Shown: positions 20,708 through 46,839, numbered from the stretch's first letter. The stretch is DNA of 64,000 bases from IMGVR_UViG_3300025098_000012:62001-126000; one strand, 5' to 3'. Numbers and translations are program-made. The notes: generated by a model not told the origin, from the letters alone.

Positions 20708-20743
20708 CTTTGTTCTCCTTTACAAGAGTGTATAAATAAGGGG

Positions 20744-20836
20744 TTACAGGTTCTTCATACGATAGTAGCTGACGATGAAGAGTCCGATGAGGCAGATGCT
20801 TACTACACCTGCGATGTCTAGTATTGTTGAGAGCAT
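20744..20836 (-). CDS. 30-aa membrane micropeptide MLSTILDIAGVVSICLIGLFIVSYYRMKNL
   Basis: SD AAAGGAGA; single hydrophobic helix; stop is the TAA inside the motif. Confidence 0.7.
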   Translation of the reverse strand: MLSTILDIAGVVSICLIGLFIVSYYRMKNL

Positions 20837-20848
20837 TGTTATTCTCCT

Positions 20849-20920
20849 TTAGGCTGAACCCTTTTGGTTGTTCTGATAGATAGTGATAATAATCATTAGT
20901 GCGATGAGTTTAAGTGTCAT
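20849..20920 (-). CDS. 23-aa hydrophobic micropeptide MTLKLIALMIIITIYQNNQKGSA
   Basis: Fills the gap between two genes; GGAAGG upstream. Confidence 0.5.
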   Translation of the reverse strand: MTLKLIALMIIITIYQNNQKGSA

Positions 20921-20921
20921 G

Positions 20922-21134
20922 TTAGACCTTCCATACTTGCGAGTGTCCAAAGCGAGTCTCTAATGCCTCTAGGAACGCACTTTGGCTCTTGGGTGAACCC
21001 TCCACATCAACTTTCACATAAGGCTCGTAGGGAGTGCCTTCTCGTGTCTTTAGGGAGACACCACAGGAGACAGTTATTGAGTGGAGCTGAAACTCTTTAG
21101 CGTGGACGGTTCGAGTCATGGCGAGGGTAGTCAT
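20922..21134 (-). CDS. Hypothetical protein
   Basis: In operon; AGAGAG before start. Confidence 0.65.
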   Translation of the reverse strand: MTTLAMTRTVHAKEFQLHSITVSCGVSLKTREGTPYEPYVKVDVEGSPKSQSAFLEALETRFGHSQVWKV

Positions 21135-21145
21135 AAGTTTCTCTC

Positions 21146-21667
21146 TTAGCGAGGGTTGTTGAACGCATCACGATCAACAGTCTCATCGAACTCTGTGATC
21201 TCGTGTCGGATGTAGCGAGGGAGATTAAGGTTCTGCTCGATGCAGTTTCGGATCTCCGTAAAGAGATGCTTGGCCTCTTTGAGTGGGTAGTGTCCATCAA
21301 CGATGACACCTCGAACATACTGACGACCATCTTCAGAGAAGAAGAAAGGGCTTCCATCTCTGCGGGTCAATCGCCCACTGTAGCTCTTAGGTCGGTTGGT
21401 GTTATTTCCTGCGAGGCTTGCGATGGTGCTAGGGATAAGACCCTTAGAACCAAAGATTACCTTATCGACATCGCTTGAGGTGCATTGAACACCTGCCTCA
21501 TTGATGAGGGCAGTTGCTTGCTCAAGACTGTTGTTTGAGGTGAACGCTTGGAGGCGAGTCAGACGCTCTTGCAACACATCCTTATAAGGGATGGTCATGT
21601 CGAGTACGACATTGTAAGCGTTGTCTCCATTGATGCGTCCTAGTTTTACTCTTGGGTGGTTAGTCAT
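21146..21667 (-). CDS. Hypothetical protein, paralogue of 23351-23956
   Basis: KGLI..YVRGVIV..IRNCIEQNLNL versus KGLL..HVRGIII..LKNAISKELDL. Confidence 0.75.
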   Translation of the reverse strand: MTNHPRVKLGRINGDNAYNVVLDMTIPYKDVLQERLTRLQAFTSNNSLEQATALINEAGVQCTSSDVDKVIFGSKGLIPSTIASLAGNNTNRPKSYSGRLTRRDGSPFFFSEDGRQYVRGVIVDGHYPLKEAKHLFTEIRNCIEQNLNLPRYIRHEITEFDETVDRDAFNNPR

Positions 21668-21743
21668 TCTTTTTCTCCATTGAGAGTGGTTGGTTGGTGG
21701 GCTTGGTTGCCCTCATGTAAGGTTATAGATAAGGGGTTACGCT

Positions 21744-22043
21744 TTACGCTTCTAACTCATCAGTTAGTTGAGAGTTAGTTTCATCGAAGAAAAAGTCGAG
21801 TGAGCTTCGATTACTCTCAGCGACTGTGGCTGTCGTATTGATGAGATCATAGAAGCATGGAGCTTCGGGTGCGACCTCCTCCATTACGCTCACCATGTTG
21901 ATGTACATCCCACGCTCTGAGATGTTGATCTCCTCATCATTCTCATGAGCCTCATCCATGAGGTCTTGGAGTTGATTGCGATACGCTTGCATCTGTGATT
22001 CTATCTGACGAGAGAGCTGTAGTAGTTTATCTTGAACTGTCAT
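21744..22043 (-). CDS. Acidic hypothetical protein (cassette gene)
   Basis: Motif plus SD. Confidence 0.75.
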   Translation of the reverse strand: MTVQDKLLQLSRQIESQMQAYRNQLQDLMDEAHENDEEINISERGMYINMVSVMEEVAPEAPCFYDLINTTATVAESNRSSLDFFFDETNSQLTDELEA

Positions 22044-22100
22044 TGTTTCTCCTTTAAGAGTTGGTTGGTTGTCGATTACATAGGGTACATAGATAAGGGG

Positions 22101-22367
22101 TTACGCTTCTTCCTTTAGAGCATTATCGAGGAACGAGTCTAAAGCACTCTCGATCTCTCCTGCATCATTCACTTGGATGAGGTATCCCCATGATCTCATG
22201 TGGTCATTTCGGTTTACATTCATGTGATAGAGCGTGTTAGGTTGCACCTTATCTAGCTCTCTCTCAGTAAGCATCTCTTGAGACATCACATCAGTTAGTC
22301 TCATGTGGTGTGTCTCGCTATCTGCGTTAGCAAATGCGAGGTAGTCAGTTCGGGTAGGTCGGATCAT
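22101..22367 (-). CDS. Hypothetical protein, paralogue of 42393-42671
   Basis: RPTRTDYLAFA versus KPTKTDYLAYA; REL..V...T; GEIE. Confidence 0.75.
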   Translation of the reverse strand: MIRPTRTDYLAFANADSETHHMRLTDVMSQEMLTERELDKVQPNTLYHMNVNRNDHMRSWGYLIQVNDAGEIESALDSFLDNALKEEA

Positions 22368-22369
22368 TA

Positions 22370-22747
22370 TTATCCTTTCTCCATGTTCTTCATGTTGTTA
22401 ACGATGTCAGCGAAGTTGATTACTCCCTTCGTGTTCTCATTGCGTTCTTCAAGCTCCCGATTCAGTTGTATCAGCATAGCTTCTTCGATCTTGCCTATGA
22501 TCTCATCAGCATGATTGACGATCTCACCAAGAGGTGAAATGCTGAACTGAAAGTCTCCCTCTAGCCATTCGGGAAAGTCCATGTCTCCATCTTGCCAGTG
22601 ATCATATTTGTACTCGTAGAAGTACCGACCTGCTGGTACTAGATCATCGCCTTGAAAGACTTGACCTGTAGTGGTTGATGTTACTCGGAAGCCATCTGGG
22701 TTTCCCCCGATAGCCCACTCGATGATAGATTGTATGTCTTGTCTCAT
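22370..22747 (-). CDS. Hypothetical protein (cassette gene)
   Basis: Motif plus SD AAGGAGA. Confidence 0.75.
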   Translation of the reverse strand: MRQDIQSIIEWAIGGNPDGFRVTSTTTGQVFQGDDLVPAGRYFYEYKYDHWQDGDMDFPEWLEGDFQFSISPLGEIVNHADEIIGKIEEAMLIQLNRELEERNENTKGVINFADIVNNMKNMEKG

Positions 22748-22967
22748 ACATCTCCTTATCTAGTTGTCAAAGAAAGTTAGTGGGTGGTCTCTACCACCCT
22801 CGATACTAGTACATAGATAAGGGGTTACGACTCGCCTGTGGCCTAAACAGCAAACCTCTTAAGAGTTGAGGGATTTCGGGGGTTTAGCTACTCGTAACCC
22901 CTTATCTATAGAACAGTATCGGGGCTGAATGACTCACCCCACCAACCACTCCCCAATGGAGAACAAC

Positions 22968-23228
22968 ATGAACGCACTTTCCCCCCTAACATACGCAGAA
23001 GCCTCACATGGTGTAAGTCAGATAGTAAGCAAGCTCGGTTTCCCACTCTTTATGGGTGAGGCAGAGCGTAAGCCTACTGTCAAGGCTGTACGACAGCAAG
23101 TAGGAGCGTACTACAGCTCTCTTGCTAAAGAGAACAAACTCGACTGTCTCCATGCGTATGACGCAGAGAACAAGGCAGATCTGATCGAGAACGCTGTTGC
23201 CGAGCTTCTTGAGCGAGTCGAGGGCTAA
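22968..23228 (+). CDS. Hypothetical protein (cassette gene)
   Basis: Start re-assigned to the ATG after SD GGAGA. Confidence 0.75.
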   Translation: MNALSPLTYAEASHGVSQIVSKLGFPLFMGEAERKPTVKAVRQQVGAYYSSLAKENKLDCLHAYDAENKADLIENAVAELLERVEG

Positions 23229-23350
23229 GGGAGTCGGGGTCGTAACCCCTTATCTATAGACCTAGTGTGAGAGGCTAGGGGAACAATCAACCAGCAATCA
23301 TATAACATTTACATCAACTGCAAATCACATCTCTTGAAAGGAGAACCATC

Positions 23351-23956
23351 ATGCAGAACATCACAGCAACCAACAACACAAGCATCACTTTCACCACAAC
23401 CAAGAGTGGAAAGGCAGACCTCAAGAAAGACGGTGGTACAGTTCGTGGTCGTCATACAGTACAAGTGGATATGCTTGTGGGTACTGACCACAAGACCATC
23501 GCAGGTCTTGACCTCACTAAAGTCTTAACTGCTGACCGAGCAAAGCTCAAGACAGCTCTTGAGACTCGTGGCTTGGTCTTTACTGACCTCGACTTCACCC
23601 TCGCTCTCGATGGGGATCAGCCTCGCAAGAAGGGTCTGCTCACAGCACTTCGACAGTCAGCTACAGGCACTAACGATGATAACAAGCACTTGGAGGCTTA
23701 CTCTGATCACCCTTGTGGGGTGCGTGGGGTGAGCATCCATGATGGGACAGGTGATGTCCATGTGCGTGGTATCATCATCGGAGAGAAGATCATCTCGGCT
23801 GACCCAAACGGTGATGCGAGAAAGACCAAGAGTGGTCTTCATGTCCAACTCAAGAACGCTATCAGCAAAGAGTTGGATCTTACCACTCGCAAGTGGAGAC
23901 AGTACAAGCTCCCTGCTTCTGCGACCGTAAATGGGGTTGACAACCCTACCCTCTAA
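23351..23956 (+). CDS. Hypothetical protein, paralogue of 21146-21667
   Basis: Motif plus SD AAAGGAGA. Confidence 0.8.
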   Translation: MQNITATNNTSITFTTTKSGKADLKKDGGTVRGRHTVQVDMLVGTDHKTIAGLDLTKVLTADRAKLKTALETRGLVFTDLDFTLALDGDQPRKKGLLTALRQSATGTNDDNKHLEAYSDHPCGVRGVSIHDGTGDVHVRGIIIGEKIISADPNGDARKTKSGLHVQLKNAISKELDLTTRKWRQYKLPASATVNGVDNPTL

Positions 23957-24032
23957 TCCTCATCGGGTGCTTCGCTGTAACCCTTTATTTATAAGTTTAC
24001 ATCAGCCAACCATACCACTAAGGAAAGCAATC

Positions 24033-25268
24033 ATGGCAAAACCAAATCTAAGTAAGACTGTAAGAGAAAACATCCCTTTCATCCTCGGTGGGAATGGGGA
24101 GATGAACAAGAAAGAAATTCGAGATGCGTATGTCGCTCTTGAGGGGTGTTCGTCAGAACACGACTTTGGAACAAATAAGGACACTTGGAGCAAGCTCCGA
24201 TCTGCTATACATGGAGCGTGTCCTAAGCTCGTGAAACAAGGTGTACTCTTTCAACCGAGTAAGGGTAAGTTCGATGTTGTACAGGGTACAGCTATCCCCT
24301 CAGCCTTTGTGCCTTTCCTAAATAGTCAGCCTGTGGTCAAGCCTGTTGAGGTCGCTCCTGTGGTCGAAGCCGAGCCTGTAGTCGAGGTTGAGGAAACCGT
24401 TGAGGTCGCTCCTGTAGAGCCTGTGGTCGAGGTTGAGGAAACCGTTGAGGTTGAGGAAACCGTTGAGGTTGCTCCTATGGTCGAGGTGAGTGTGAGCAAC
24501 CCTGCTGTAATCGAAGCCCATATCGACACCGAGACTCAAGAGCTTGTCGAGAATGTTGGTGGTAGCCGAGATTGGCGAAAGCCTCTTGATGAGGTTGAAG
24601 ATGGGTACATCACTTCAAGCGTACAGGTCAGCACAACAACACTTGAGCCTGTTGCAGAGCCTGTTGCAGAGCCTGTTGCTGAGGTTGCCCCTGTAGAGGT
24701 CGAGGTTGCCCCTGTAGAGCCTGTGGAGGTTCAAGAGGTGGTAGAGCCTACCCCTGTGGTAGAGGACGATGTAGAGGACGATGTAGAAGATCCTGTAGAG
24801 GACGATGATGAGACTCAAGATGAAGATCAACAACCGAGCTATGATCTTAGAGATCTTCGCAAGAGTGCTTCCTTCGATCCTTTGAAGATCACCTTAAAGA
24901 ATGGGGCTACAGGTAGCTATGAGGTGTATCGAGACATGGAAGCACGAATGGTGGTTTTGACTCAAAAAGGTCGTGAGGACTATGTGATGATCCCTGTCGA
25001 TGTGGATCAAGACCGACTTGACGCTCTTAATGAGTTAGATGCTCGTTATGCTCCATACGCTATCAAGTCAGTGGCAGACTTTGACTCAGCACAGCACCAC
25101 AAGGACGGATGTAAGCGTATGGTGACAGCTCTCGTATCCTGTACAAAGAACTGCGACCATACGGATGACTTTGGTGGTCTAGCCGAGTCTTGCCCTAAGC
25201 CTCACGACTGTCCACTAAAGAGCATTTGGGGAGAGGTGGCGATCTATGTCGATCCCCAAGACGCATAA
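24033..25268 (+). CDS. N-terminal winged-helix (Mrr_N-like) protein with long acidic E/V/P repeat linker and Cys-rich C-terminus
   Basis: KLRSAIHGACPKLVKQGVLFQPSKGKF; VEVEET/PVAE/DDVE repeats; four C-terminal Cys. Confidence 0.7.
   Translation: MAKPNLSKTVRENIPFILGGNGEMNKKEIRDAYVALEGCSSEHDFGTNKDTWSKLRSAIHGACPKLVKQGVLFQPSKGKFDVVQGTAIPSAFVPFLNSQPVVKPVEVAPVVEAEPVVEVEETVEVAPVEPVVEVEETVEVEETVEVAPMVEVSVSNPAVIEAHIDTETQELVENVGGSRDWRKPLDEVEDGYITSSVQVSTTTLEPVAEPVAEPVAEVAPVEVEVAPVEPVEVQEVVEPTPVVEDDVEDDVEDPVEDDDETQDEDQQPSYDLRDLRKSASFDPLKITLKNGATGSYEVYRDMEARMVVLTQKGREDYVMIPVDVDQDRLDALNELDARYAPYAIKSVADFDSAQHHKDGCKRMVTALVSCTKNCDHTDDFGGLAESCPKPHDCPLKSIWGEVAIYVDPQDA
24330..24810 (+). repeat. In-frame imperfect tandem repeats (GTTGAGGAAACCGTTGAG; GAGCCTGTTGCA; GTAGAGGACGAT)
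   Basis: Seen directly. Confidence 0.85.
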
Positions 25269-25479
25269 TGAAACCCCTCTCAAGCTGTTAAGTGAAAGCC
25301 GACTAGAGCGAGGATTAAGGGAAATAGCCCCGACACTTAAGAGCTTGAGACTAGATCAAAACATACTCAACTTAAAGTTTAGCCAAATGACAATCATTCT
25401 CCCCCTAACATCAACCATGACTTGGGGGCAACTAACAAACTCCCTACAGGAGAAAGGTCTTACCCATGAGCCTAACTAA
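25246..25479 (+). CDS. Hypothetical protein
   Basis: Overlapping operon member. Confidence 0.5.
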   Translation: MSIPKTHNETPLKLLSESRLERGLREIAPTLKSLRLDQNILNLKFSQMTIILPLTSTMTWGQLTNSLQEKGLTHEPN

Positions 25480-25702
25480 AAGAGAACTGCAAGACTCAAT
25501 CATCATCGTAATCGAGCGAGATGGTACACACCACATCAAAATCCCAAACAATGACAGCCTAGAGTTTGATCGAAAGGCTTATAACGCAATGATGAACACC
25601 ATGACCGTCCTAGACGAACCGAGCTTTGTATTGAGGGCTTTCCTTTGGATCGAACGGAGACTTCAATCTCTTAATGTCATGATCTTTGGAGCGAGTGCTT
25701 GA
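25466..25702 (+). CDS. Hypothetical protein
   Basis: Overlapping operon member. Confidence 0.6.
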   Translation: MSLTKRELQDSIIIVIERDGTHHIKIPNNDSLEFDRKAYNAMMNTMTVLDEPSFVLRAFLWIERRLQSLNVMIFGASA

Positions 25703-26055
25703 TTATGAAAAGATACACACGAAAAGTGAATGGGAAGATTGAGTGGGAGTATCACAAACTCTTACCCGATGAAGATGCTGGAGATTTGATTAGAGGTGCT
25801 TGTTTGGAGATGGGGTTTGTTCCTATTGATTCTGGAATCTACGCATTAAAGACAGACGAGGGGTTCTTAAAGGTTATTTGGCAAGGGGAAGAAAGACATG
25901 GCTGGATAGTAGAAATAAACAACTACTCCGAGATGTTTTTCATCCGCCAAAGTTTGTTCGATACCATAAGGTCGGTATGGTCACATGAGCGTAAAAACCC
26001 TTTAGCTTCACCTCCTATTTTTTCTTCAAAAGAGATCGAAGAAATACTAGGTTAA
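25699..26055 (+). CDS. Member of the IR.VW paralogue family
   Basis: KVNGKIEW...LEMGF...DTIRSVW. Confidence 0.7.
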   Translation: MIMKRYTRKVNGKIEWEYHKLLPDEDAGDLIRGACLEMGFVPIDSGIYALKTDEGFLKVIWQGEERHGWIVEINNYSEMFFIRQSLFDTIRSVWSHERKNPLASPPIFSSKEIEEILG

Positions 26056-26061
26056 GATTTT

Positions 26062-26508
26062 TTAAAGTTTATCATCGAGCCAAGAGAGATCCAGCGTCCA
26101 ATTATGTTTGGATCTCTCATTCCATTGCTCAAAGACTTGAACGATGTAGTCCTCAGTCTCTTGAGGTGTGAGGCTATTGACGGAGGCAAGTTTGTGTAGT
26201 ACCTGCGATTGAACTTGGGGCGACTCTACTGAGAGGGTTCGCCCGATGTGTTTGACCTTGTGGCAGGTAGGGCAGAGAGAAATCAGACCTTTGAGAGTTT
26301 GGGTCTTGGTCTGATCGTCATAATCCCATATCTCGTGGCACTCAACAGGCCACTTAGACCCTTTGCCTCCACAGACTTCGCATTTGTACCCTGCTTGCTT
26401 GTAAGAGGCTTTGCGTAACTTATCCCATTGGGGTTTAGAGAGGTTAGCTTCAGAGCGTAGGTTATTGCCCCATGATGATTGTGGTACGAGTTCAATCGAG
26501 AGCTTCAT
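26062..26508 (-). CDS. HNH endonuclease
   Basis: CEVCG...ECHE.W.YD...LCPTCHKVKH. Confidence 0.85.
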   Translation of the reverse strand: MKLSIELVPQSSWGNNLRSEANLSKPQWDKLRKASYKQAGYKCEVCGGKGSKWPVECHEIWDYDDQTKTQTLKGLISLCPTCHKVKHIGRTLSVESPQVQSQVLHKLASVNSLTPQETEDYIVQVFEQWNERSKHNWTLDLSWLDDKL

Positions 26509-27254: not shown

Positions 27255-27643
27255 TTTTTCTTCTCCCTTAATGCGAGCAATGTTTTTGTGAGTTCACCAG
27301 CCTCATCTTCTCTCCCTTGATTTCTATCTGGATGGCAGAACATGAGTAATCGTTTAACAAGAACTTGATCTAACCTGGGCTTGTTTTGAGCTTGATAGCG
27401 TAAGCTAGAAATCTCCATCTTAAGCTGATGAACTTGAGCGTGGAGGGTCTTGATCTGATTATCTAAGTGTTGGGTGTCTGGTGTTTCTTGTAAGAGCTGA
27501 TGGATGACTTTTTGTAGCCCGTCATATCGGTCGTCAGACTTGATCCTCTTATATCCTTGGGATTCTCTCCAGCAAGTCCAACAGAGGGCATAGTGGCTAT
27601 CTTCCATAGGCCAGTTGCATTCACTACATATTTGAACATCCAT
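27251..27643 (-). CDS. Zn-finger / coiled-coil / J-domain-like (HPD) protein
   Basis: CSEC..LCWTC; KRLLMFCHPDRNQG. Confidence 0.7.
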   Translation of the reverse strand: MDVQICSECNWPMEDSHYALCWTCWRESQGYKRIKSDDRYDGLQKVIHQLLQETPDTQHLDNQIKTLHAQVHQLKMEISSLRYQAQNKPRLDQVLVKRLLMFCHPDRNQGREDEAGELTKTLLALREKKK

Positions 27644-27702
27644 TTTTAATACTTTCTTTATGTCTCTCTTAATACAGATCATTTATATGAAAGGCATAAA
27701 CA

Positions 27703-28440: not shown

Positions 28441-28445
28441 GACAT

Positions 28446-29612: not shown

Positions 29613-29664
29613 ACTCGGTTCTCCTTTCGGGAGGGGCTGTTTATATGATCTTATAGGTAAGGGG

Positions 29665-30081
29665 TTACGACCTCTTGAACTTGACTTGGTAGGTCTGCAT
29701 TGTTTCGAGGTTGGGTACAGCGTAGAACGCTTCCTTTACTTCTTCGGGTGCATCCCGAAACTCAGACCATCTGATCGTGTATGAGTGAGCGATGTACTGA
29801 TCGAAAAGATCCTCCCCGATAGCGTCCTCGATGTCGTTGATGTCTACCGACTCTAGCTTAGGTGTCGGGGGTTGCTTCTCCACCCTAGTCGTGTATTTGC
29901 CCGATGCAGACTCGATGATGAGATCTTGTTCGTCTGCCATTTCGATCAGTTCAGACTTGAAGCTCTTAAGAGACTTACCGAGTCTGTTCTGTGCTTCCCA
30001 CAGCCGAGAGGCCGCTTCGGTTCGCTCGTTGATGTCGAGGTTGGTGTCGTTCATTTGGTTCATGAGTGCGTTGAAGTTCAT
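29665..30081 (-). CDS. Hypothetical protein
   Basis: Start re-assigned after GGAGA; stop inside the motif. Confidence 0.75.
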   Translation of the reverse strand: MNFNALMNQMNDTNLDINERTEAASRLWEAQNRLGKSLKSFKSELIEMADEQDLIIESASGKYTTRVEKQPPTPKLESVDINDIEDAIGEDLFDQYIAHSYTIRWSEFRDAPEEVKEAFYAVPNLETMQTYQVKFKRS

Positions 30082-31540: not shown

Positions 31541-31629
31541 AGTTTATCTCCTTTAGGAGTGGGTAGGTGAGCGATCTCGCCTTTCAAGAGTTAATAGATA
31601 AGGGGTTACGGAGTGCGATCCCCCCGACT

Positions 31630-32769: not shown

Positions 32770-32822
32770 AGGGTTCTCCTTGTCGAAGTGGTTGCGTTGA
32801 TGTAGTTCTCATAAATAAGGGG

Positions 32823-32864
32823 TTACGGTTCAGAGCCTCGCTCCATGACCTTATACAATCTCAT
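32823..32864 (-). CDS. 13-aa mini-ORF MRLYKVMERGSEP between two motif copies
   Basis: GAGGGAG before the ATG; stop is the TAA of the next motif. Confidence 0.4.
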   Translation of the reverse strand: MRLYKVMERGSEP

Positions 32865-33055
32865 GAGGAAATGCTCCCTCACACTAGGATATAAATAAGG
32901 GGTTACACTATATACACATACGAATGATAGGATCTCCAACAAGAAGCGTAAGTACTTGATTACCTAGCAAAAAGCCTAAAGTGTAACCCCTTATCTATAG
33001 AGTAGTGTAGGGCGATCAAGCCTACCAACCAATCACTCCCACTAAGGAGAACAAA

Positions 33056-33223
33056 ATGAAATACCAAGTAATGCTCAACAACAAAGTCCTCTCAACACAT
33101 AAAAATCATGACCTCGCTGAGAAGGCTCTCAAGCGTTGGGAGAAGAAACACAAAGCTCAAGGCAAAGGTCGGGTCATCGGAGAGTTTTTGGTCGGTGGTA
33201 TCTACCACATCGAAGCTGTGTAA
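33056..33223 (+). CDS. 55-aa basic protein not in the ORF track (MKYQVMLNNK...YHIEAV)
   Basis: Full leader, SD AAGGAGA; stop inside the next motif. Confidence 0.8.
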   Translation: MKYQVMLNNKVLSTHKNHDLAEKALKRWEKKHKAQGKGRVIGEFLVGGIYHIEAV

Positions 33224-33313
33224 CCCCTTATCTAAGACCCTGTGTCGAGGACTGATTTTCCTCGCTTTCATATAAATACAAGACTACCCACTCACTCACC
33301 AAAGGAGATCCTT

Positions 33314-34459: not shown

Positions 34460-34513
34460 TAGGTTGGGTACTCCGTAACCCCTTATTTGTCTACTCTTGA
34501 AAGGAGACTTATC

Positions 34514-35755: not shown

Positions 35756-35812
35756 GTAACCCGAAATCTATCTGACCCCATCACCGAACCCACTCCCACA
35801 GGAGAACCAAAC

Positions 35813-36197: not shown

Positions 36198-36294
36198 TTA
36201 TAGATTTCTAACTTGTGGCCCGAAGCTGTAACCCCTTATTTATAACTTAGTATCGGGGCAATGAAGCCCACTCACTCTGACAAGGAGAACCAAC

Positions 36295-36819: not shown

Positions 36820-36991
36820 GGTCTAGGGTGGGTCGGAGCTGAAAAGCTCTTAGAAGAGCATTTAAGAGCTTAATGGAAAAAGGAATAACGACTATGTTTT
36901 CGGGGGTTTGGAGTTCGTAACCCCTTATTTATAGAGTAGTGTAAGGGGAACAATCCCCACCAACCAATCACTCCAACAAGGAGAACAAGAC

Positions 36992-37294: not shown

Positions 37295-37375
37295 CAATCG
37301 GGAGGCGTAACCCCTTATCTATACCATAGTGTAAGAGGGATTGACCCTCACCAACTACTCAAGGAGAAAAAAAGA

Positions 37376-37696: not shown

Positions 37697-37889
37697 GAGA
37701 GGTCGGACTGAGGTAATGTAAGAGGGGAGCAATCCTTGAGCGTAAGGTTAAGAGGGGCAACTTAATCCAGAAGCTAGACATCTAGGGGTGGCGAGGTCTG
37801 AGCGTTATAGTGGGATAAGTCGTAACCCCTTATCTATAAGATTGTAAGAGGAACGATCCTCTTAGACTACACTCCAGAAAGGGAGAACA

Positions 37890-38486: not shown

Positions 38487-38490
38487 CGAG

Positions 38491-39470: not shown

Positions 39471-39559
39471 GTGTTCTCCTTTAGAACTTGTTGGTGATGC
39501 TCCTCTTTAAGTAAGGGGTTACATTAGCCCGTCCTTAGCTCCATAAAGAGGAGGAGGGT

Positions 39560-39584: not shown

Positions 39585-39644
39585 GGGTTGTAACCCCCTA
39601 TTTATGAGGGTGCATCAACCACTCACTCCCAATGGAGACAAAAC

Positions 39645-41195: not shown

Positions 41196-41804
41196 TTACC
41201 CACGAGGGAGCATACCCTCCCTTGAGTCAAAGTTATACTCCTCGATGATCTTGTTGATCCTCTCAAGCTGAGTAGCTACCCACTCTTGATTGCCCCCACC
41301 TTTAGTGTCGTAGTGGTGGTCGAGGAGGTGGAGATTTTGGTCAATGCTGAACAGCTCCGAACTGAGCCTCCAGTTCGCATCATCGTAGTCCTTGACGACC
41401 TGTGGTGGCAAGATCTCAACCTCCCACGCTTGATCTCTGAGGAGGTCATTAAGCTCATCCTCTCGCTCGTCCTCATCTAAGGTGGGGTCGAGCGATGCCT
41501 TAGCCGCCTCCTCATCAAACCACTCCCGATTGATGTCCCAAGGGTACACACCTTCCATGACGCAGTGGTCGCAAAGCTCCTCGTCATGGTCGTACTCGTC
41601 ATATCCGACACAGTATGATGCCATGTATCGTCCTGCCCCATTACACTCAGTGCAGACCTTAGCCTCAGCGTAGCGAGATGCTTGGAGTTTAGCCTTAGCC
41701 TCCTCTAGCTTCGCCTTGAGGGTGGGGAGGGCCTTGATCTCGCTCTCGATTTGAGCGATGAGGACTCGCTCGGAAGTTTTGATGTCTTGTAGTGATGGCA
41801 TCAT
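41196..41804 (-). CDS. Coiled-coil plus DnaJ-type Zn-finger protein
   Basis: CTECNGAG...CDHC; start re-assigned after GGAGA. Confidence 0.75.
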   Translation of the reverse strand: MMPSLQDIKTSERVLIAQIESEIKALPTLKAKLEEAKAKLQASRYAEAKVCTECNGAGRYMASYCVGYDEYDHDEELCDHCVMEGVYPWDINREWFDEEAAKASLDPTLDEDEREDELNDLLRDQAWEVEILPPQVVKDYDDANWRLSSELFSIDQNLHLLDHHYDTKGGGNQEWVATQLERINKIIEEYNFDSREGMLPRG

Positions 41805-41884
41805 ATTGATGTCTCCATTAGGAGTGAGTGAGGTGCGTGATGATTCTGCACCTCTTACATAAGGATATAGATAAGGGGTTACGC

Positions 41885-42076: not shown

Positions 42077-42355
42077 CTAGTGGTGGTAAGGGTTCATGGG
42101 AGTGCCAGGCTCAAAGCCTGTGATCAGCCACTCTCGGATTTGGACTGACCAATCCTTGAGTGCATCTTGAGCGACAGCTCCCTCAGCCCATGCAGTGAGC
42201 ATGGCGATGGCTTGAGGAGCAGGGGTGTCCACCGTTAGTGTGGTGGACACATGAACGAACATGGAGGGTGATCGAGTGAGGGTGGTCTTACCCTCAACCT
42301 CGTTGACCTCAACTGAGATCGAACCCATTGGTCTTTGATGTGTGATGGTTGTCAT
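42077..42355 (-). CDS. Hypothetical protein
   Basis: SD AAGGAGA; C-terminal REWLITG. Confidence 0.75.
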   Translation of the reverse strand: MTTITHQRPMGSISVEVNEVEGKTTLTRSPSMFVHVSTTLTVDTPAPQAIAMLTAWAEGAVAQDALKDWSVQIREWLITGFEPGTPMNPYHH

Positions 42356-42392
42356 GTTGGTTCTCCTTAGTGGTTGATACAAGGTTATCTGT

Positions 42393-42671
42393 TTAAGGGG
42401 TTACGAAGTGCTTGCTACTGCACTCGATCTCCCCTGTCTCACCGTTGATGCTGATCCCGATGTCCTCCTCTTTATCACCGTTGCGATCTAGGATGTTGAG
42501 TTGGAGGGGGGTGTCTACAGGCACATTGCGAAGCTCTCGTCCTTCCCATCCGTCTGTGGCGAAGTCGAGGATGTTCCCATTCTCATCGTACTCGCAAGCA
42601 CAGATCTCAACTTGATGGTTTCGAGAGTAGCCTGCATAGGCGAGGTAGTCTGTTTTAGTAGGTTTACGCAT
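42393..42671 (-). CDS. Hypothetical protein, paralogue of 22101-22367
   Basis: Shared motifs; last codons V-T-P-stop are encoded by the motif. Confidence 0.75.
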   Translation of the reverse strand: MRKPTKTDYLAYAGYSRNHQVEICACEYDENGNILDFATDGWEGRELRNVPVDTPLQLNILDRNGDKEEDIGISINGETGEIECSSKHFVTP

Positions 42672-42805
42672 AAGCATAAGTCCTTTCATAGTTGTCAAAG
42701 AGTTAGTAGGGCAACCACTGTCGCCCTCGATACTGTTCAATAAATAAGGGGTTACGCCAACCTGTAACCCCTTATTTATTACAAAGCATCAACCAAGGAG
42801 AACCT

Positions 42806-42955
42806 ATGTATGAACTATATGATCGCTTTGAGAAGGAGGTCGTCAAGACCTTTGCCTCTCTAGGAGAAGCAGGGTTTTACCTCGCCCAAGAGGTAGAGCA
42901 AGAGTATCGAAAAGAGCGTGGGGTGAGTCTACCTCGCTTCACTATCAACTACTAA
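42806..42955 (+). CDS. 49-aa protein not in the ORF track (MYELYDRFEK...RFTINY)
   Basis: Motif plus SD AAGGAGA. Confidence 0.75.
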   Translation: MYELYDRFEKEVVKTFASLGEAGFYLAQEVEQEYRKERGVSLPRFTINY

Positions 42956-42968
42956 GAAAGGACTGCAC

Positions 42969-43610
42969 ATGACCTTGACCCAAAAAATAAACGGGGTTCG
43001 CAAGATGATCCCGACACCACATCACAAGACTGCGTACAAGACCAAAGGGTCTATGCAGTCCTGGTATGACCGACACACCAAACTTTTCACTGAGCTTGCT
43101 GAGGAGATAGGCTTTGAGGTCAGTAAAGAGACAGGCACTCTATCCTCTTTTACGGGCACTATCTTGAACATCAAGAAGAGTGGGTTTGGGGACTTTAAGC
43201 TCACCTTGAGATGGGCTAAGGATGGTTTATCTACGGTGCGTCTATGTGGCAACAGCACTGACCATACAGTCTACCCTTATCAGACATGGCGAGGGTACGA
43301 GAAGCCTCAGTCTCATAATGATGCTCACTTGGGTAACTGGTTCCTCAAGTTGATACGATTGGATTGGGTCGCTGGTAACAGACCGAACATCCATCAGATC
43401 AAGGTCGATGATGAGATAGTGTTTAGTGGCACACCAGGTGGTGGTGGTCAACGCACACGAGCTAAGGTTGTAGGGTATGGTGGAGCATGGGGTCGTAGCT
43501 ACTTCAAGGTGTCGCTATTAGAGGAGCGAGGGGTGAAGAAGATCAAACCTGTGGGAACGGTCATGGAGGTACACTATAACTGCATCATCCACCACGAGGG
43601 CAAAGCGTAA
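42969..43610 (+). CDS. Hypothetical protein with C-terminal SH3-like segment
   Basis: IKVDDEIVF..RAKVV; stop inside the motif. Confidence 0.75.
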   Translation: MTLTQKINGVRKMIPTPHHKTAYKTKGSMQSWYDRHTKLFTELAEEIGFEVSKETGTLSSFTGTILNIKKSGFGDFKLTLRWAKDGLSTVRLCGNSTDHTVYPYQTWRGYEKPQSHNDAHLGNWFLKLIRLDWVAGNRPNIHQIKVDDEIVFSGTPGGGGQRTRAKVVGYGGAWGRSYFKVSLLEERGVKKIKPVGTVMEVHYNCIIHHEGKA

Positions 43611-43653
43611 CCCCTTAAGCATATAATAGCATACAGCACTTGAAAGGACTGAC

Positions 43654-44025
43654 ATGACCATCGAACAACAGCGACTCCAATATGCAACAATCCGAAACAG
43701 CCTACCCCAACCTTTTCGTGGGGAGTGGAGAAACATCGAGCAAGCCTTTACTGACCTTGATGTACCTCCTACCCCTAGCGAGTGGGTATCCGAGCTGTCC
43801 AAATACAGCTCTGAGGTATCTCAATATAAGTCGGCTCTTGATGCTTGGGTCAATCTCCGAATGGAAGATGAAGCAGGTTGGGGTGAGGATCACGATCCTA
43901 ATCAAATCAATGGGTGGCGAGATGACCTCAGCATTGTCAGCAAGACGAGCCTCTTGCGAAGGCAGTTTAACGAGGACTTAAACACCATGATAAGCTACGA
44001 TGAGTGGCGAGAAAGTAGAGACTAG
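43654..44025 (+). CDS. Hypothetical protein
   Basis: Motif plus SD AAAGGA. Confidence 0.75.
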   Translation: MTIEQQRLQYATIRNSLPQPFRGEWRNIEQAFTDLDVPPTPSEWVSELSKYSSEVSQYKSALDAWVNLRMEDEAGWGEDHDPNQINGWRDDLSIVSKTSLLRRQFNEDLNTMISYDEWRESRD

Positions 44026-44029
44026 TAAT

Positions 44030-44347
44030 ATGACGACATACGCTAATAACTGTGGACACCTACAAGACCTTATCTCCGAAGCTCACAGTGAGAGATTAAG
44101 TGAGAGCGATGCGAAGATATGGGCTAAGTCATTCATAGAGGAACTTGAGAACTATGAGGAGGTCAAGGACATGGCACACCACTATGGCATCTCCTCAGTC
44201 GAGGTAGCCCACCACCAAACGATCAAAGCACATCTCTTAAAGAAGATGGTCGAGGAGATGCTCGACTTTGACAGTGCCGATGATGAGGATGAATACTATG
44301 CCCTAGATGATGACGACTATGGCGATGGTATGGAGGGCGAGCTATGA
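44030..44347 (+). CDS. Acidic hypothetical protein
   Basis: D/E-rich tail; operon member. Confidence 0.65.
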   Translation: MTTYANNCGHLQDLISEAHSERLSESDAKIWAKSFIEELENYEEVKDMAHHYGISSVEVAHHQTIKAHLLKKMVEEMLDFDSADDEDEYYALDDDDYGDGMEGEL

Positions 44348-44934
44348 AGGCACTCATAGGGCTGACGATCAAGAAGGCTAAGGAGGTAGCCAAGCAAGAG
44401 CTAGGGGTCAAGAGAATGGGCGATGCTCGCTTTCAGATGATCCTCGATCAAGGGGTCAAGAGTGGCGACTTCATCCTTGACGGTGATATGATTAAAGACC
44501 CAAGCGAAGATGATCCCTTAGACCTGTTCGGTGAAGTGGTTGTCGAAGATGACCCCTTAGACCCCGATCCAGTTATTTCTACTAAGACCACGCATCCCGA
44601 AGTGGCTCTCCTTGACCCCAAGCTGTCTAGCTCTGACCTGCCAAGAGCAGGTGATCTCTACCACTACAGATCATACTCTGGTGAGGTCGTGCAGGGTGAA
44701 GTAAAGTCAACCATCTGCTTTGCCGAATGTCAAAACCCCGATGGTACATGGCAAACGGTAGCCTTCCAAGACCTCTATCTCAAAAAGCGTGGTGTGCCTA
44801 AAGAGACAATGCTCAACCACCTTAACGCTTACTACCAAAATAATAACCACTTAAGATCTGAGCGTGATCGGCTTTTAAAAGAAATCAGCGAGCTAGAAGG
44901 GAAGATTAACCAGGCGAAGGGAGATACGCAGTAG
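44344..44934 (+). CDS. Hypothetical protein
   Basis: ATGA coupling; C-terminal coiled coil. Confidence 0.75.
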   Translation: MKALIGLTIKKAKEVAKQELGVKRMGDARFQMILDQGVKSGDFILDGDMIKDPSEDDPLDLFGEVVVEDDPLDPDPVISTKTTHPEVALLDPKLSSSDLPRAGDLYHYRSYSGEVVQGEVKSTICFAECQNPDGTWQTVAFQDLYLKKRGVPKETMLNHLNAYYQNNNHLRSERDRLLKEISELEGKINQAKGDTQ

Positions 44935-44998
44935 TAACCTCTTATCTATAACCTAGTAAGGGAATGAACCTCTCCAACCACTCCCTAATGGAGACAAC

Positions 44999-45403
44999 AT
45001 GGACATCGCCACCAAGACCATCAAGACCCTTGAGGATCGCCTCGATCACCTCAAGGCACAGCTCAAAGCTGAACACCCTAACCACTGTCAGCACTGTGGA
45101 GGACAAGGTGGACACGAGCATCACGATAGCGGAAGTCGATGGGAGCCGCCTCACTCTGAGTGGGAAGAGTGTCCTCAATGCTTCGGGCAGGGTTTGCATC
45201 CTCTCGACATCACCAAGTCGATGAGTGAGGAAGAGGCTGAGGATTGGGTTGAAGTGAGTGCCGAAGATATGCACCATCTCCTCAAGGAGATCCTAGACAC
45301 CGAGCTGAACCTGTCCGCCTCCGAAGAATACCTCACCTACCTTGAGATAGAAGAAGCTATCGCAGAGGCTCACGATGAGTGGGATCGTCAAAGACAAGGT
45401 TAA
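44999..45403 (+). CDS. DnaJ-type Zn-finger protein
   Basis: CQHCGGQG...CPQCFGQG. Confidence 0.8.
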   Translation: MDIATKTIKTLEDRLDHLKAQLKAEHPNHCQHCGGQGGHEHHDSGSRWEPPHSEWEECPQCFGQGLHPLDITKSMSEEEAEDWVEVSAEDMHHLLKEILDTELNLSASEEYLTYLEIEEAIAEAHDEWDRQRQG

Positions 45404-45568
45404 TCAACATCCTGTCAGAACCCCATCAAAAACTCTTGGGGGGATCTCGGAGTCCCTAAAAACCCATATTGAAAACGCATACAAAATGACACCCTTAATT
45501 TGAAACCCCCTTTCGTAACCCCTTATTACATTATACAAACACAACCAAATACGAGAGGTATGAATACA

Positions 45569-45937
45569 ATGGACACTACACTGACCAAAACACATGAACT
45601 AGACGCAGAGCTAGTGGCACATAAGCTATCAGAGCTTCGTGGTGGCTCTTACCACGATGCAAGACCTGTGGAGATCGAGATCACGAATGGGGCATACATC
45701 AGTTTCAAGATGTGGACAGGCGAGGACGAGCCAGAGGAAGATGAGGATGATGATCGAGAGTGGAACTTGGAGTGTTCTACAGATGACCTTCTCTCAAACC
45801 TCAAGAGAGCTTGTCGAGAGGCAGGAGTGGACATCGAGATGGAGTACCAATACTGCGATGTTCATAACGACTATCGCAAGGGCATCTATGTCGATGCCTG
45901 TATCGACCTTACGAACACAGGAGCAGACAATGGCTAA
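45569..45937 (+). CDS. Acidic hypothetical protein
   Basis: Motif at 45515; SD GAGAGG. Confidence 0.7.
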   Translation: MDTTLTKTHELDAELVAHKLSELRGGSYHDARPVEIEITNGAYISFKMWTGEDEPEEDEDDDREWNLECSTDDLLSNLKRACREAGVDIEMEYQYCDVHNDYRKGIYVDACIDLTNTGADNG

Positions 45938-46164
45938 GTCTCTCCAGAGGGGGGGGTCTTATATATGAGCGTTTTTGAAAAAGCGATGTTGGATAAGTGA
46001 TCTCATATATTATTTGAGTTTGGATTTTTTGGGTTGATTTTCTAACCCCCTTTTTGAAGCGAAAGAGGAATATGCGAGCAATGACGGACTGGTGGAACTG
46101 TTGTGTGCATCATGGGTAGATTTGTAACCCCTTATTTATAGACTCTTGAAAGGAGAACCATATT

Positions 46165-46767
46165 ATGAAATGGACAAAGATGGAGGCGATTGAGTCTCGC
46201 CAACAAGAAACGCTAGTGAAGAGAATGGGAGAGGTTCAACAAGACCCTCCGTATCCTTTGAGGGATATAACCTATGTGTACAAGAATGAGACTAGTTGTT
46301 CGTATGGTACACATTCTGGTCGCATAGAGCGTTGGTACTTTAAAGGGGATCGGTTACAGGATCGCCACTCGATGTATCGTTTATGGATTTACAAAGATGG
46401 AGGGGAGGTGTCTTTCTTTGATAGCTTTTACAAGCTCACCTACTGTAAGGATTGGGTTGAGCATGACTTAAGAGAGGGAGACTTATTAAGGTTCTCCCAT
46501 TTCAACGAGGGGTTTTCGCCTCATGGTACGGTGTACCGAGTGCAGTTGGACAAGTACCCTCACCTCACCTATGACGATGTTCTCAACTGGGTCTTAGCGA
46601 AAGAGAAGGCTTTGATGGGATATAGGGGTCAATACATGGAAGTGTATGGTGGTGATAACCCTAGAGTTGAGTTTTTCCATCATGTTTTAAAGAGGGTAGC
46701 TAAGGTCAAGCATATGGATTTAGTGGACGAAGTAAACGAGTGGGGATCAAATCTTATAAAGGCATAG
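46165..46767 (+). CDS. Hypothetical protein
   Basis: Motif plus SD AAAGGAGA. Confidence 0.75.
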   Translation: MKWTKMEAIESRQQETLVKRMGEVQQDPPYPLRDITYVYKNETSCSYGTHSGRIERWYFKGDRLQDRHSMYRLWIYKDGGEVSFFDSFYKLTYCKDWVEHDLREGDLLRFSHFNEGFSPHGTVYRVQLDKYPHLTYDDVLNWVLAKEKALMGYRGQYMEVYGGDNPRVEFFHHVLKRVAKVKHMDLVDEVNEWGSNLIKA

Positions 46768-46839
46768 TGTCATTTATTTTAGAATAGCATACGAAGTAGT
46801 AACCCCTTATTTATTAACTCTTGAAAGGAGAACATTAGT

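What the first reader, a model, noticed from the sequence alone, without database searches (positions are those of the whole stretch)
20731..46815. Array of self-contained gene cassettes delimited by a 17-bp GTAACCCCTTATYTATA element
Seen: 30 copies in 26 kb (about 32 in the window), each oriented into the next gene and none inside structural or replication genes. Units of one to a few small unknown genes lie between copies, in both orientations. The motif is contiguous and does not look like a sigma70 -35/-10 pair. Known analogy: PeSL regulatory cassettes that shuffle genes in T4-type phages. Inference: the element is a promoter for a phage-encoded polymerase or factor and may also act as the joint for capture and reshuffling of accessory genes, an integron-like 'plug-in' gene library. 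No site-specific recombinase is visible in the window.
Basis: partly seen in the sequence, partly recalled or inferred. Interest (0 to 1): 0.9.

Follow-up and report, generated by a model that had tools for sequence, protein, structure and literature searches.

The report
Repeated phage promoter that also shuffles genes
A 17-base sequence repeated about 30 times in an uncultivated giant marine phage is most likely a phage-specific promoter placed before each small unknown gene unit, and related phages show that some gene units were inverted, swapped or inserted exactly at it, as in the known PeSL cassettes of T4-type phages.

Summary
There are 27 copies with at most 2 mismatches (0.04 expected) and 32 with an intact GTAACCCC core; 30 lie in 20731-46815. 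All are intergenic or overlap a stop codon, and 31 of 32 point into a Shine-Dalgarno site and start codon 22-92 nt downstream.

The window is part of a roughly 345-375 kb uncultivated marine phage. Relatives with about 80% nucleotide identity keep the motif at matching positions while the flanks diverge.

The 17-mer heads a module: core, often a GC hairpin, a CA-rich leader, then the ribosome-binding site. Sigma70-like promoters are depleted in the region. Divergent copies only 8 nt apart leave no room for another promoter. So it is very likely a promoter of a non-sigma70 type.

Its polymerase or factor was not found in about 215 kb of the genome.

Two inversions, one order swap and several insertions between relatives end at motif copies in the orientation recombination would need. 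However, gene turnover is about as frequent at junctions without the motif, and nothing integron-like is present.

Verdict: a PeSL-like promoter cassette array with a new promoter type, that is, a new variant of a known kind.

The parts
20731..46815 (.). Hyperplastic array of about 50 small genes, nearly all without known homologues, headed by 30 copies of the 17-mer. It lies between a tail/structural block on the left and a replication/recombination block on the right.
2655..2671 (-). Degenerate copy (4 mismatches) before 2151-2633, a Pyr_excise/denV-like gene of 160 aa
3480..3496 (-). Exact copy before 2951-3421 (156 aa)
20731..20747 (-). Exact copy with short leader; drives 20495-20707 and 20317-20493
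21724..21740 (-). Exact copy with hairpin leader; drives 21146-21667
22088..22104 (-). Copy (1 mismatch) driving 21744-22043. Homology to relative A ends exactly at its 5' edge.
22812..22828 (-). Copy (1 mismatch) with a strong leader hairpin. Drives the cassette 22101-22747, which only this phage has. Relative A keeps the promoter and hairpin but not the genes.
22894..22910 (+). Exact copy, divergent partner of 22812; drives 22968-23228
23242..23258 (+). Exact copy; drives 23351-23956
23977..23993 (+). Copy (1 mismatch); drives 24033-25268 and three further genes
29652..29668 (-). Copy (1 mismatch); drives 29472-29612, 28759-29469 and 28446-28781
31593..31609 (-). Copy (1 mismatch); drives 30785-31540, 30113-30760 and 29665-30081
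32810..32826 (-). Copy (1 mismatch); drives 31630-32769 (AAA_5 ATPase, 379 aa)
32890..32906 (-). Exact copy with a hairpin but no gene, an 'empty' promoter. Relatives A and B have the same arrangement.
32983..32999 (+). Exact copy; drives 33056-33223 (55 aa). This cassette is absent from relative B.
33220..33236 (+). Copy (2 mismatches) overlapping the upstream stop codon; drives 33314-34459
34475..34491 (+). Copy (2 mismatches) with short leader; drives 34514-35326 and 35411-35755
35756..35772 (+). Degenerate copy (4 mismatches); drives 35813-36046, found only in this phage. Homology to A ends at 35754.
36228..36244 (+). Exact copy; drives 36295-36819 (DUF6011). The block homologous to A starts at 36227. 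The order of this cassette and the next is swapped in A.
36917..36933 (+). Exact copy; drives 36992-37294. This is the second cassette of the swapped pair.
37307..37323 (+). Exact copy; drives 37376-37696, found only in this phage. Homology to A ends exactly at 37323.
37822..37838 (+). Exact copy; drives 37890-39054. It is the left end of the 4-kb segment that is inverted in relative B.
39506..39522 (-). Copy (2 mismatches); drives 39051-39470
39590..39606 (+). Copy (2 mismatches); drives 39645-40046. The block homologous to A starts at 39588.
41866..41882 (-). Exact copy; drives 41196-41804 and the genes beyond it. It is the right end of the 4-kb segment inverted in B; that block ends at 41883.
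42388..42404 (-). Degenerate copy (4 mismatches); drives 42077-42355. It is the left end of the single-cassette inversion relative to A.
42739..42755 (-). Copy (1 mismatch); drives 42393-42677. It sits back to back with 42764, 8 nt apart.
42764..42780 (+). Copy (1 mismatch); drives 42806-43610. It is the right end of the single-cassette inversion.
43607..43623 (+). Degenerate copy (3 mismatches) overlapping the upstream stop codon; drives 43654-44934
44934..44950 (+). Copy (1 mismatch); drives 44999-45403. Blocks homologous to A and B end at 44957 and 44951.
45515..45531 (+). Degenerate copy (4 mismatches) before the gene called at 45569-45937
46042..46058 (+). Decayed copy, aligned with the intact copy of relative A at A 28719. 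It marks the left joint of the inserted cassette 46124-46798.
46124..46140 (+). Exact copy with short leader; drives 46165-46767. This cassette is absent from A.
46799..46815 (+). Copy (1 mismatch) with short leader; drives 46840-47175 and the plus-strand genes after it. Homology to A resumes exactly at 46799.

Best explanation
The 17-mer is the core of a phage-specific promoter that is not of the sigma70 type. It heads a regulatory module of about 40-110 nt. In order, the module has the 17-bp core, a weakly conserved stretch of 8-12 nt, in about half of the copies a GC-rich hairpin of variable sequence, a CA-rich unstructured leader, a strong AAGGAGA ribosome-binding site, and the start codon. 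One such module stands before nearly every transcription unit of a 26-kb hyperplastic region full of genes without known homologues, in a roughly 345-375 kb uncultivated marine phage.

The same 17 bp recur about 30 times in both orientations. The copies therefore also act as short homologies at which the phage's general recombination machinery occasionally crosses over (RecA-type recombinase, PD-(D/E)XK nuclease, helicases). Crossing over between inverted copies flips the DNA between them. Crossing over between direct copies removes, inserts or reorders promoter-plus-gene cassettes, and each gene still ends up behind a working promoter. This is how PeSL cassettes of T4-type phages are described to work.

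Shown: repetition, placement, orientation, conservation, lack of sigma70 features, and rearrangement ends at motif copies.

For: Real and non-random: 27 copies against 0.04 expected, with a contiguous, near-invariant 17 bp.

Promoter placement: 31 of 32 copies point into a ribosome-binding site and start codon 22-92 nt away. In the short-leader class the ribosome-binding site begins 9-11 nt after the motif, so the transcript must start just after it.

No room for another promoter: the divergent copies 42739(-) and 42764(+) are 8 nt apart, and the same arrangement occurs in relatives A and B.

Not sigma70: sigma70-like sites number 13 against 22.4 expected in 20-40 kb, and none lies at the cassette heads.

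Conserved: relatives A and B (75-89% nucleotide identity) keep the motif at matching places, while leaders are about 75% and upstream flanks about 60% identical. Multi-copy matches occur in dozens of IMG/VR contigs.

Structured leaders: 54% have a folding energy of -6 kcal/mol or lower, against 25% of shuffles.

Recombination:
- Order swap of cassettes 36228-36916 and 36917-37306 relative to A. The motif at A 16596 has the left flank of W 37307 and the right flank of W 36228.
- Inversion of 42404-42779 relative to A, between copies 42388(-) and 42764(+).
- A 4-kb inversion relative to B, between 37822(+) and 41866(-).
- Insertion of the 46124 cassette between a decayed and an intact copy.
- All three gene units with no homologue in any held locus (22101-22747, 35813-36046, 37376-37696) run from motif to motif.
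- Of 30 block ends between this phage and A, 11 lie within 8 nt of a motif edge, against 3.7% for random positions and 20.7% for random intergenic positions.

The recombinase and nuclease genes are in the window.
Against: No transcription start data exist.

At the level of gene junctions, motif junctions are breakpoints only slightly and not significantly more often than motif-less ones (14 of 23 against 10 of 23, p = 0.38, with the same trend in all six comparisons).

Against an intergenic null, the nucleotide-level enrichment is modest: p = 0.03 for this phage against A, 0.18 for this phage against B, and 0.61 for A against B.

Local alignments tend to extend through a conserved motif, which pulls block ends toward motif edges. 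Selection for intact promoter-gene units would also favour such joints.

One indel (22105-22771) has only one end at a motif; the other end lies 40 nt into a leader.
Confidence: 0.7

Rival explanations
1. The 17-mer is only a promoter. Cassette differences between relatives arose by ordinary illegitimate recombination and homing-endonuclease activity. The joints appear at the motif because only rearrangements that keep promoter-gene units intact survive, and because alignments run on through the conserved motif.
For: The junction-level test is not significant. The enrichment over an intergenic null is weak for this phage against B and for A against B. Gene replacements at 25689-27250 have no motif and lie next to an HNH endonuclease. 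The indel 22105-22771 has one end inside a leader.
Against: Two independent inversions and one order swap each have both ends at motif copies in exactly the orientation that recombination between repeats requires, with hybrid flanks within 0-2 nt of the motif edges. Of 17 intergenic block ends between this phage and A, 11 are at motif edges, against 21% expected (p = 1e-4).
Confidence: 0.2
2. The 17-mer is the target of a dedicated site-specific system. Candidates are the type IB topoisomerase / tyrosine-recombinase-like protein encoded elsewhere in the genome acting at the CCCTT inside the motif, or a Chi-like hotspot. The array would then be a true integron-like capture device.
For: The motif contains CCCTT, which by my own knowledge is the cleavage site of poxvirus-type topoisomerase IB. 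The same contig encodes a 475-aa protein with the Topoisom_I catalytic domain (E = 9e-12) and a weak Phage_integrase hit.
Against: CCCTT occurs 345 times elsewhere in 150 kb, with observed/expected 0.88, so it does not single out the motif. The topoisomerase gene lies about 60 kb from the array. There is no attC-like palindrome, cassettes carry their own promoters and lie in both orientations, and turnover also happens at motif-less junctions. The topoisomerase-like protein has no sequence match to solved structures.
Confidence: 0.04
3. The 17-mer is not a promoter. It would instead be a transcribed 5'-UTR signal (a processing or translation-control site) or an operator for a DNA-binding regulator, with the true promoters elsewhere.
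For: No start-site data exist. The array encodes HTH proteins. The conserved leader and hairpin suggest control at the RNA level.
Against: Divergent gene pairs have only 42 bp (17 + 8 + 17) between their leaders, so both promoters must lie in the copies themselves. No sigma70-like promoters are present at the cassette heads. Nothing is conserved upstream of position -1. No Rfam family matches.
Confidence: 0.06

Closest known systems
PeSL (promoter-early stem-loop) regulatory cassettes of T4-type phages (PMC2839356, PMC4122927)
   Same: A repeated intergenic promoter-containing element concentrated in a hyperplastic region of small genes without known homologues. It includes a GC-rich stem-loop and ends in a ribosome-binding site and start codon. 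Indels, replacements and rearrangements between close relatives have joints in the element, with chimeric copies. No dedicated recombinase is involved.
   Different: The promoter here is one contiguous 17-bp block with no -35/-10 pair and no likeness to the sigma70 consensus. The stem-loop lies downstream of the core, in the leader, is present in only about half of the copies, and is not followed by a T run. The phage is not T4-type (family A DNA polymerase, about 345-375 kb). Mini-circles are untested.
Promoters of T7/T3/SP6-type single-subunit RNA polymerases (own knowledge)
   Same: A contiguous block of about 17 bp with very high information content. It has a specific G+C-rich upstream part and an A+T-rich ...TATA 3' end that abuts the start of the transcript. 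It is repeated before many transcription units of one phage.
   Different: No single-subunit polymerase gene (PF00940) was found in about 57% of the genome. The base after TATA is T in 11 of 32 copies, which is unusual for such enzymes. A second motif class shares only the 3' 9-mer.
Early promoters read by virion-delivered polymerases of giant phages (phiKZ/AR9 type, N4) (own knowledge)
   Same: Short contiguous phage-specific motifs before early genes of large phages, unlike host promoters.
   Different: No multisubunit polymerase signature (DxDGD) or N4-like polymerase was detected. The 3037-aa and 2181-aa giant proteins show no polymerase features.
Integron cassette arrays (own knowledge)
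   Same: An array of small accessory genes that varies between relatives.
   Different: There is no integrase or attI next to the array and no attC sites. Every cassette has its own promoter, and cassettes lie in both orientations.

Membership tests
PeSL cassettes (T4-type phages) | Repeated intergenic element concentrated in a hyperplastic region of genes without known homologues | tested here: met
   30 copies in 26 kb. Nearly all genes there lack Pfam or PHROG hits.
PeSL cassettes (T4-type phages) | Contains a sigma70-consensus early promoter (-35/-10 with an AT-rich upstream region) | tested here: not met
   The conserved part is a single contiguous 17-bp block with nothing conserved upstream. 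Sigma70-like sites are depleted and none lies at the cassette heads.
PeSL cassettes (T4-type phages) | Stable GC-rich stem-loop within the element, acting as terminator or attenuator | tested here: inconclusive
   A GC hairpin is present in about half of the leaders (54% at -6 kcal/mol or lower against 25% of shuffles). It lies downstream of the core and has no T run. A hairpin using the ACCCC of the motif is present in only 19% of copies. Terminator function was not tested.
PeSL cassettes (T4-type phages) | Joints of indels, replacements and rearrangements between close relatives fall in the element, giving chimeric copies | tested here: met
   An order swap, two inversions, and insertions with hybrid flanks. 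This is not exclusive: turnover also occurs at motif-less junctions.
PeSL cassettes (T4-type phages) | Excised mini-circles formed by exchange between neighbouring elements | not testable with these tools
   This needs inverse PCR or long reads. A metagenome scan for the alternative orientation of one cassette found none, but only one contig carries the reference joint.
T7-type single-subunit RNA polymerase promoter | Contiguous conserved block of about 17-23 bp with an A+T-rich 3' end abutting the start site | tested here: met
   The 17-bp block ends in TATA. The ribosome-binding site begins 9-11 nt later in short leaders, so the start must be within that gap. The start site itself was not mapped.
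T7-type single-subunit RNA polymerase promoter | Cognate single-subunit polymerase gene (PF00940) in the same genome | tested here: inconclusive
   None was found in about 215 kb of about 345-375 kb. The only PF00940 hits (L049, L042) belong to unrelated podoviruses of about 42 kb.
Bacterial sigma70 promoter | -35 and -10 hexamers with 16-18 bp spacing | tested here: not met
   No register of the motif gives A at position 2 and T at position 6 of a -10 hexamer.
Integron | IntI integrase with attI and a common promoter at the head of the array | tested here: not met
   There is no integrase in the window. The only tyrosine-recombinase-fold gene is a topoisomerase IB-like one about 60 kb away.
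Integron | Promoterless cassettes, each ending in an imperfect-palindrome attC, all in one orientation | tested here: not met
   The motif is not palindromic, lies 5' of each unit, and occurs on both strands (14 copies on the minus strand and 18 on the plus strand).

The most novel reading that the evidence does not exclude
The 17-mer, together with a second class that shares its 3' TTATTTATA, is read by a transcription enzyme or specificity factor of a family not yet recognisable by sequence. It might be delivered with the virion. This would fit a phage of about 350 kb in which more than half of the genome shows no RNA polymerase or sigma factor. The same site might additionally be used as a programmed recombination joint.
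Probability: 0.15. Interest if true: 0.8.

Novelty: new variant of a known kind. Interest (0 to 1): 0.5.

Why it matters
If right, promoter-mediated cassette shuffling is not a peculiarity of T4-type phages that borrow the host sigma70 promoter. It would recur in an unrelated lineage of giant marine phages with a quite different, very information-rich promoter. That supports a general rule: any short regulatory sequence repeated before accessory genes becomes a joint for reordering them.

It also flags a clade of roughly 350-kb phages, found in many ocean metagenomes, whose transcription machinery is unidentified. The 17-mer gives a ready handle (pull-down, reporter assays) to find it. It is also a simple marker for the transcription units and early or accessory regions of these genomes.

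Tried and rejected
1. T7-like polymerase lead. Two motif-bearing IMG/VR contigs (L049, L042) encode PF00940 polymerases. They belong to a large family of marine podoviruses of about 42 kb. The 17-mer there is a coding stretch (GNPLSIQG) that varies at synonymous sites in relatives. This is a chance match.

2. The 3037-aa ORF (9149-18262) as a virion polymerase. It has no Pfam, PHROG or PDB hit, even with a 17-sequence profile, and no polymerase motifs.

3. The 2181-aa ORF elsewhere on the contig. Its homologues carry SNF2/ResIII domains, so it is not a polymerase.

4. Walking the contig and relative A with precomputed Pfam (12 look-ups) and scanning all large ORFs of the held loci. No polymerase, no sigma factor and no DxDGD motif were found.

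5. Topoisomerase IB and CCCTT. The pentamer is common elsewhere, with observed/expected 0.88.

6. Host clue from bacterial genomes. There were 82 stretches with a match. By my own estimate this is about what chance would give in that collection (about 140). The only multi-copy case, MAG AUK107, carries the 17-mer inside an unrelated dispersed repeat of about 90 nt.

7. The only relative in the phage collection, LR745208.1 (485 kb). The 41 kb read around its RecA gene lacks the motif.

8. Terminator overlapping the promoter. This is seen in a minority of copies only, and intrinsic-terminator-like sites are not enriched.

9. Rfam and tRNA scans found nothing.

10. A metagenome scan for the opposite orientation of cassette 42405-42763 found none, but the reference joint is present in just one contig.

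11. Archaeal TATA/BRE reading. I rejected it by reasoning: the strongly conserved ribosome-binding site in the short leaders would then lie upstream of the start site.

Full report
OBSERVATION. The pattern GTAACCCCTTATYTATA occurs 27 times in the window with at most 2 mismatches. Dinucleotide-preserving shuffles give 0.04 on average and never more than 1. Allowing up to 4 mismatches while requiring the GTAACCCC core gives 32 copies. Thirty lie in 20731-46815, and the other two are at 2655(-) and 3480(-). Positions 1-12 and 14-16 are almost invariant and position 13 is C or T. Nothing upstream is conserved except a pyrimidine at -1. A weaker signal follows for about 15 nt. Every copy is intergenic or overlaps a stop codon by a few bases. 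Thirty-one of 32 are followed on the same strand by an AAGGAGA-type ribosome-binding site and a start codon 22-92 nt later. The exception, 32890(-), is followed by a hairpin and then the next copy. The array has one motif-free stretch of 5.7 kb (23994-29651).

WHERE THE WINDOW COMES FROM. The window is 100% identical to pieces of IMG/VR contig 3300025098_000012, which is JGI Ga0208434_1000005 (226,698 bp); the window covers positions 62001-126000. The same proteins sit on contigs of 345-376 kb. The contig encodes portal, terminase, tail sheath and baseplate-like proteins, a family A DNA polymerase, clamp and clamp loader, RecA and many methyltransferases. It is therefore a very large tailed phage. 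Its only relative in the phage collection is the 485-kb metagenomic record LR745208.1, at 26-51% protein identity. Left of the array lie tail and virion genes, including a 3037-aa ORF. To the right lie recombination and replication genes. The roughly 50 genes of the array have almost no Pfam or PHROG hits. The exceptions are DUF6011, an AAA_5 ATPase, and a pair of genes encoding an HNH endonuclease and an HTH-repeat protein.

THE ELEMENT IS A MODULE, NOT JUST 17 BP. Two leader types follow the core. Short leaders run straight into the ribosome-binding site 9-11 nt after the motif. Long leaders have a stretch resembling TAGTGTAAG, a GC-rich hairpin whose sequence differs from copy to copy, a CA-rich tract and then the ribosome-binding site. 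Over 81 copies in three genomes, 54% of the first 42 nt fold at -6 kcal/mol or lower against 25% of shuffles, and 32% against 7% at -9 kcal/mol. A hairpin that uses the ACCCC of the motif and would end in the T-rich half is present in only 19% of copies, and 6 of those 15 are the back-to-back divergent pairs.

WHY IT IS A PROMOTER.
- Orientation and distance to the downstream gene are uniform.
- In short leaders the transcript must begin within the 9-11 nt between the motif and the ribosome-binding site.
- Copies 42739(-) and 42764(+) are 8 nt apart. Between the two divergent leaders there is nothing except 17 + 8 + 17 bp. The same arrangement exists in relatives A and B.
- Sigma70-like sites are depleted (13 against 22.4 expected) and absent from the cassette heads. 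No register of the motif gives a proper -10 hexamer.
- The motif is kept at matching positions in relatives of 75-89% nucleotide identity, while leaders and upstream flanks diverge.
- Elsewhere on the contig it precedes small genes and a clamp-loader operon. It does not precede the portal or the large structural genes next to it. This suggests an early or middle class.

A contiguous, information-rich block with a G+C-rich upstream half and a ...TATA end has the layout of promoters of T7-type single-subunit polymerases (own knowledge). That is a resemblance only.

Precomputed Pfam annotation was read over about 155 kb of the contig and about 60 kb of the part of relative A that the contig lacks. 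Large ORFs of other loci were also scanned by Pfam and PHROG. No RNA polymerase or sigma factor appeared. No DxDGD-type motif occurs in any ORF of 250 aa or more. The 3037-aa protein has 33 homologues, all unnamed. Its profile hits nothing in the PDB and it has no polymerase motifs. A 2181-aa protein belongs to the SNF2 family. A promising PF00940 hit proved to belong to unrelated podoviruses in which the 17-mer is a coding stretch. About 43% of the genome remains unseen.

A second promoter-like class, ATAGTTTATTTATA with a conserved leader of about 50 nt, occurs nine times in 150 kb of the contig. It shares the 3' TTATTTATA with the 17-mer. This suggests a common core with class-specific upstream halves.

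COMPARISON WITH RELATIVES. Three lineages were compared over the array: W (the window), A (a 375,691-bp contig) and B (several near-identical contigs).

Events with both ends at motif copies:
(a) Cassettes 36228-36916 and 36917-37306 are in the opposite order in A. The homologous blocks are W 36227-36868 with A 16595-17238, and W 36910-37323 with A 16203-16612. The motif at A 16596 therefore joins the left flank of W 37307 to the right flank of W 36228.
(b) W 42404-42779 matches A 23781-23401 in inverse orientation. This is exactly what an exchange between the inverted copies 42388(-) and 42764(+) would give.
(c) In B the segment between W 37822(+) and W 41866(-) is inverted. The gene next to each copy is now driven by the other copy. 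One block end is 1 nt from the motif.
(d) The cassette at 46124-46798 is an insertion relative to A. Its left joint is a decayed motif copy at 46042 and its right joint is the copy at 46799.
(e) The three gene units with no homologue in any held locus (22101-22747, 35813-36046, 37376-37696) each run from motif to motif.
(f) 'Empty' promoters (W 32890, A 2360, A 12832, B 12795) look like footprints of gene loss.

HOW STRONG IS THIS? Of 30 block ends between W and A inside the array, 11 lie within 8 nt of a motif edge. Random positions give 3.7% (p = 5e-9) and random intergenic positions give 20.7% (p = 0.03). Among the 17 intergenic ends, 11 do so (p = 1e-4). For W against B and for A against B the excess over the intergenic null is not significant.

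At the level of gene junctions, motif junctions are breakpoints in 59-72% of cases and motif-less junctions in 42-49%. No comparison is significant (p = 0.19-0.39). Replacements at 25689-27250 have no motif and lie at an HNH endonuclease gene. One indel has an end inside a leader. Alignments also tend to run through the conserved motif, and selection favours joints that keep promoter and gene together. I therefore regard motif-mediated recombination as well supported for a handful of events. It is not the only or dominant route of change. Leaders mostly travel with their genes, so the mobile unit is promoter plus leader plus gene(s).

WHAT IT IS NOT. It is not an integron. There is no integrase at the array and no attC-like palindrome, every cassette has its own promoter, and cassettes lie in both orientations. 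A topoisomerase IB-like gene exists about 60 kb away and the motif contains CCCTT. However, CCCTT is common throughout the contig (345 further copies, observed/expected 0.88), so this adds nothing specific. The motif is not a host-type sequence as far as can be seen. In 185,579 species genomes it appears about as often as chance would give by my own estimate, and the one multi-copy case is an unrelated repeat. No Rfam family or tRNA is present.

COMPARISON WITH WHAT IS KNOWN. The closest described system is the PeSL cassette of T4-type phages. PeSLs are repeated promoter-plus-stem-loop elements in hyperplastic regions. Recombination between them causes indels, replacements and mini-circles (PMC2839356, PMC4122927). 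The present array works like that. It fails one defining feature, the sigma70-consensus promoter, and places the hairpin differently. The phage is not T4-type. It is therefore best filed as a new variant of a known kind.

VERDICT. The PeSL analogy is apt and partly borne out by comparative data. The integron-like 'plug-in library' and the phage-encoded polymerase remain unsupported and unresolved, respectively. Interest is moderate: the mechanism has a precedent, but the promoter type and the missing transcription machinery in a widespread clade of giant marine phages are worth following up.

Noticed in passing
window 62737-62749(+) and 58991-59003(+); seven more on the same contig outside the window: A second promoter-like class, ATAGTTTATTTATA, is followed by a strongly conserved leader of about 50 nt. 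It has 9 copies in 150 kb and shares the 3' 9-mer TTATTTATA with the 17-mer. The conserved leader may be a regulatory RNA or a protein-binding site.
   Followed up: partly
window 26062-27254(-): An HNH endonuclease gene (26062-26508, phrog_5200, E = 2e-52) lies directly after a gene of three tandem HTH repeats. Those repeats are encoded by a 150-bp tandem repeat of 2.6 copies (26535-26975). Relatives have a shorter HTH gene. This is probably a homing-endonuclease-type mobile gene, and it sits in the motif-free, variable part of the array.
   Followed up: partly
window 9149-18262(-): A 3037-aa ORF has 33 homologues of 2400-3800 aa in metagenomes and no match to Pfam, PHROGs or the PDB, even with a profile. 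GC skew reaches -0.43 at 16-18 kb. It is probably a virion or tail protein of unknown function.
   Followed up: partly
window 27682-27703: The starts of divergent genes 27251-27682(-) and 27703-28440(+) are only 20 nt apart. There is no motif copy and no sigma70-like site. How these genes, and the 5.7-kb motif-free stretch, are transcribed is unexplained.
   Followed up: no
150 kb of the contig that holds the window (window, L101, L181-L183, L053, L088): There is extreme pentamer avoidance: CCTGA/TCAGG 6 observed against 234 expected, and GCAGC/GCTGC 8 against 171. The contig also carries at least eight N6/N4 DNA methyltransferase genes. This suggests strong pressure from restriction systems.
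   Followed up: no
L046:6070-7494(+) (same contig, about 60 kb right of the array): A 475-aa protein has a topoisomerase IB catalytic domain (PF01028, E = 9e-12) and a weak Phage_integrase hit. It has no sequence match in the PDB.
   Followed up: partly
L181:11850-14969(-) and L183:13087-14571(+): There are inteins in the large terminase subunit (1040 aa, with a LAGLIDADG domain) and in an IMP-dehydrogenase-like gene.
   Followed up: no
L203-L268 (MAG 'bacterium AUK107', JAGGVT01): At least 22 contigs of one bacterial MAG carry the exact 17-mer inside a dispersed repeat of about 90 nt that is nearly identical between copies. It has no protein similarity to the phage. It is an unrelated repeat family that happens to contain the same 17 bases.
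   Followed up: partly
L049:1338-1354 and L042:826-842: Marine T7-like podoviruses hold the exact 17-mer inside their RNA polymerase gene, where it encodes GNPLSIQG. Relatives differ at synonymous sites. This is a coincidence that could mislead motif-based searches.
   Followed up: yes
window about 29718: A second IMG/VR contig identical to the window (3300037631_004912) ends about 50 nt from the motif copy at 29652-29668. This might reflect strain-level structural variation at that cassette boundary.
   Followed up: no
L182:1228-7770(+): A 2181-aa protein whose more distant homologues carry SNF2/ResIII helicase domains, that is, a giant SNF2-family ATPase in the phage.
   Followed up: partly
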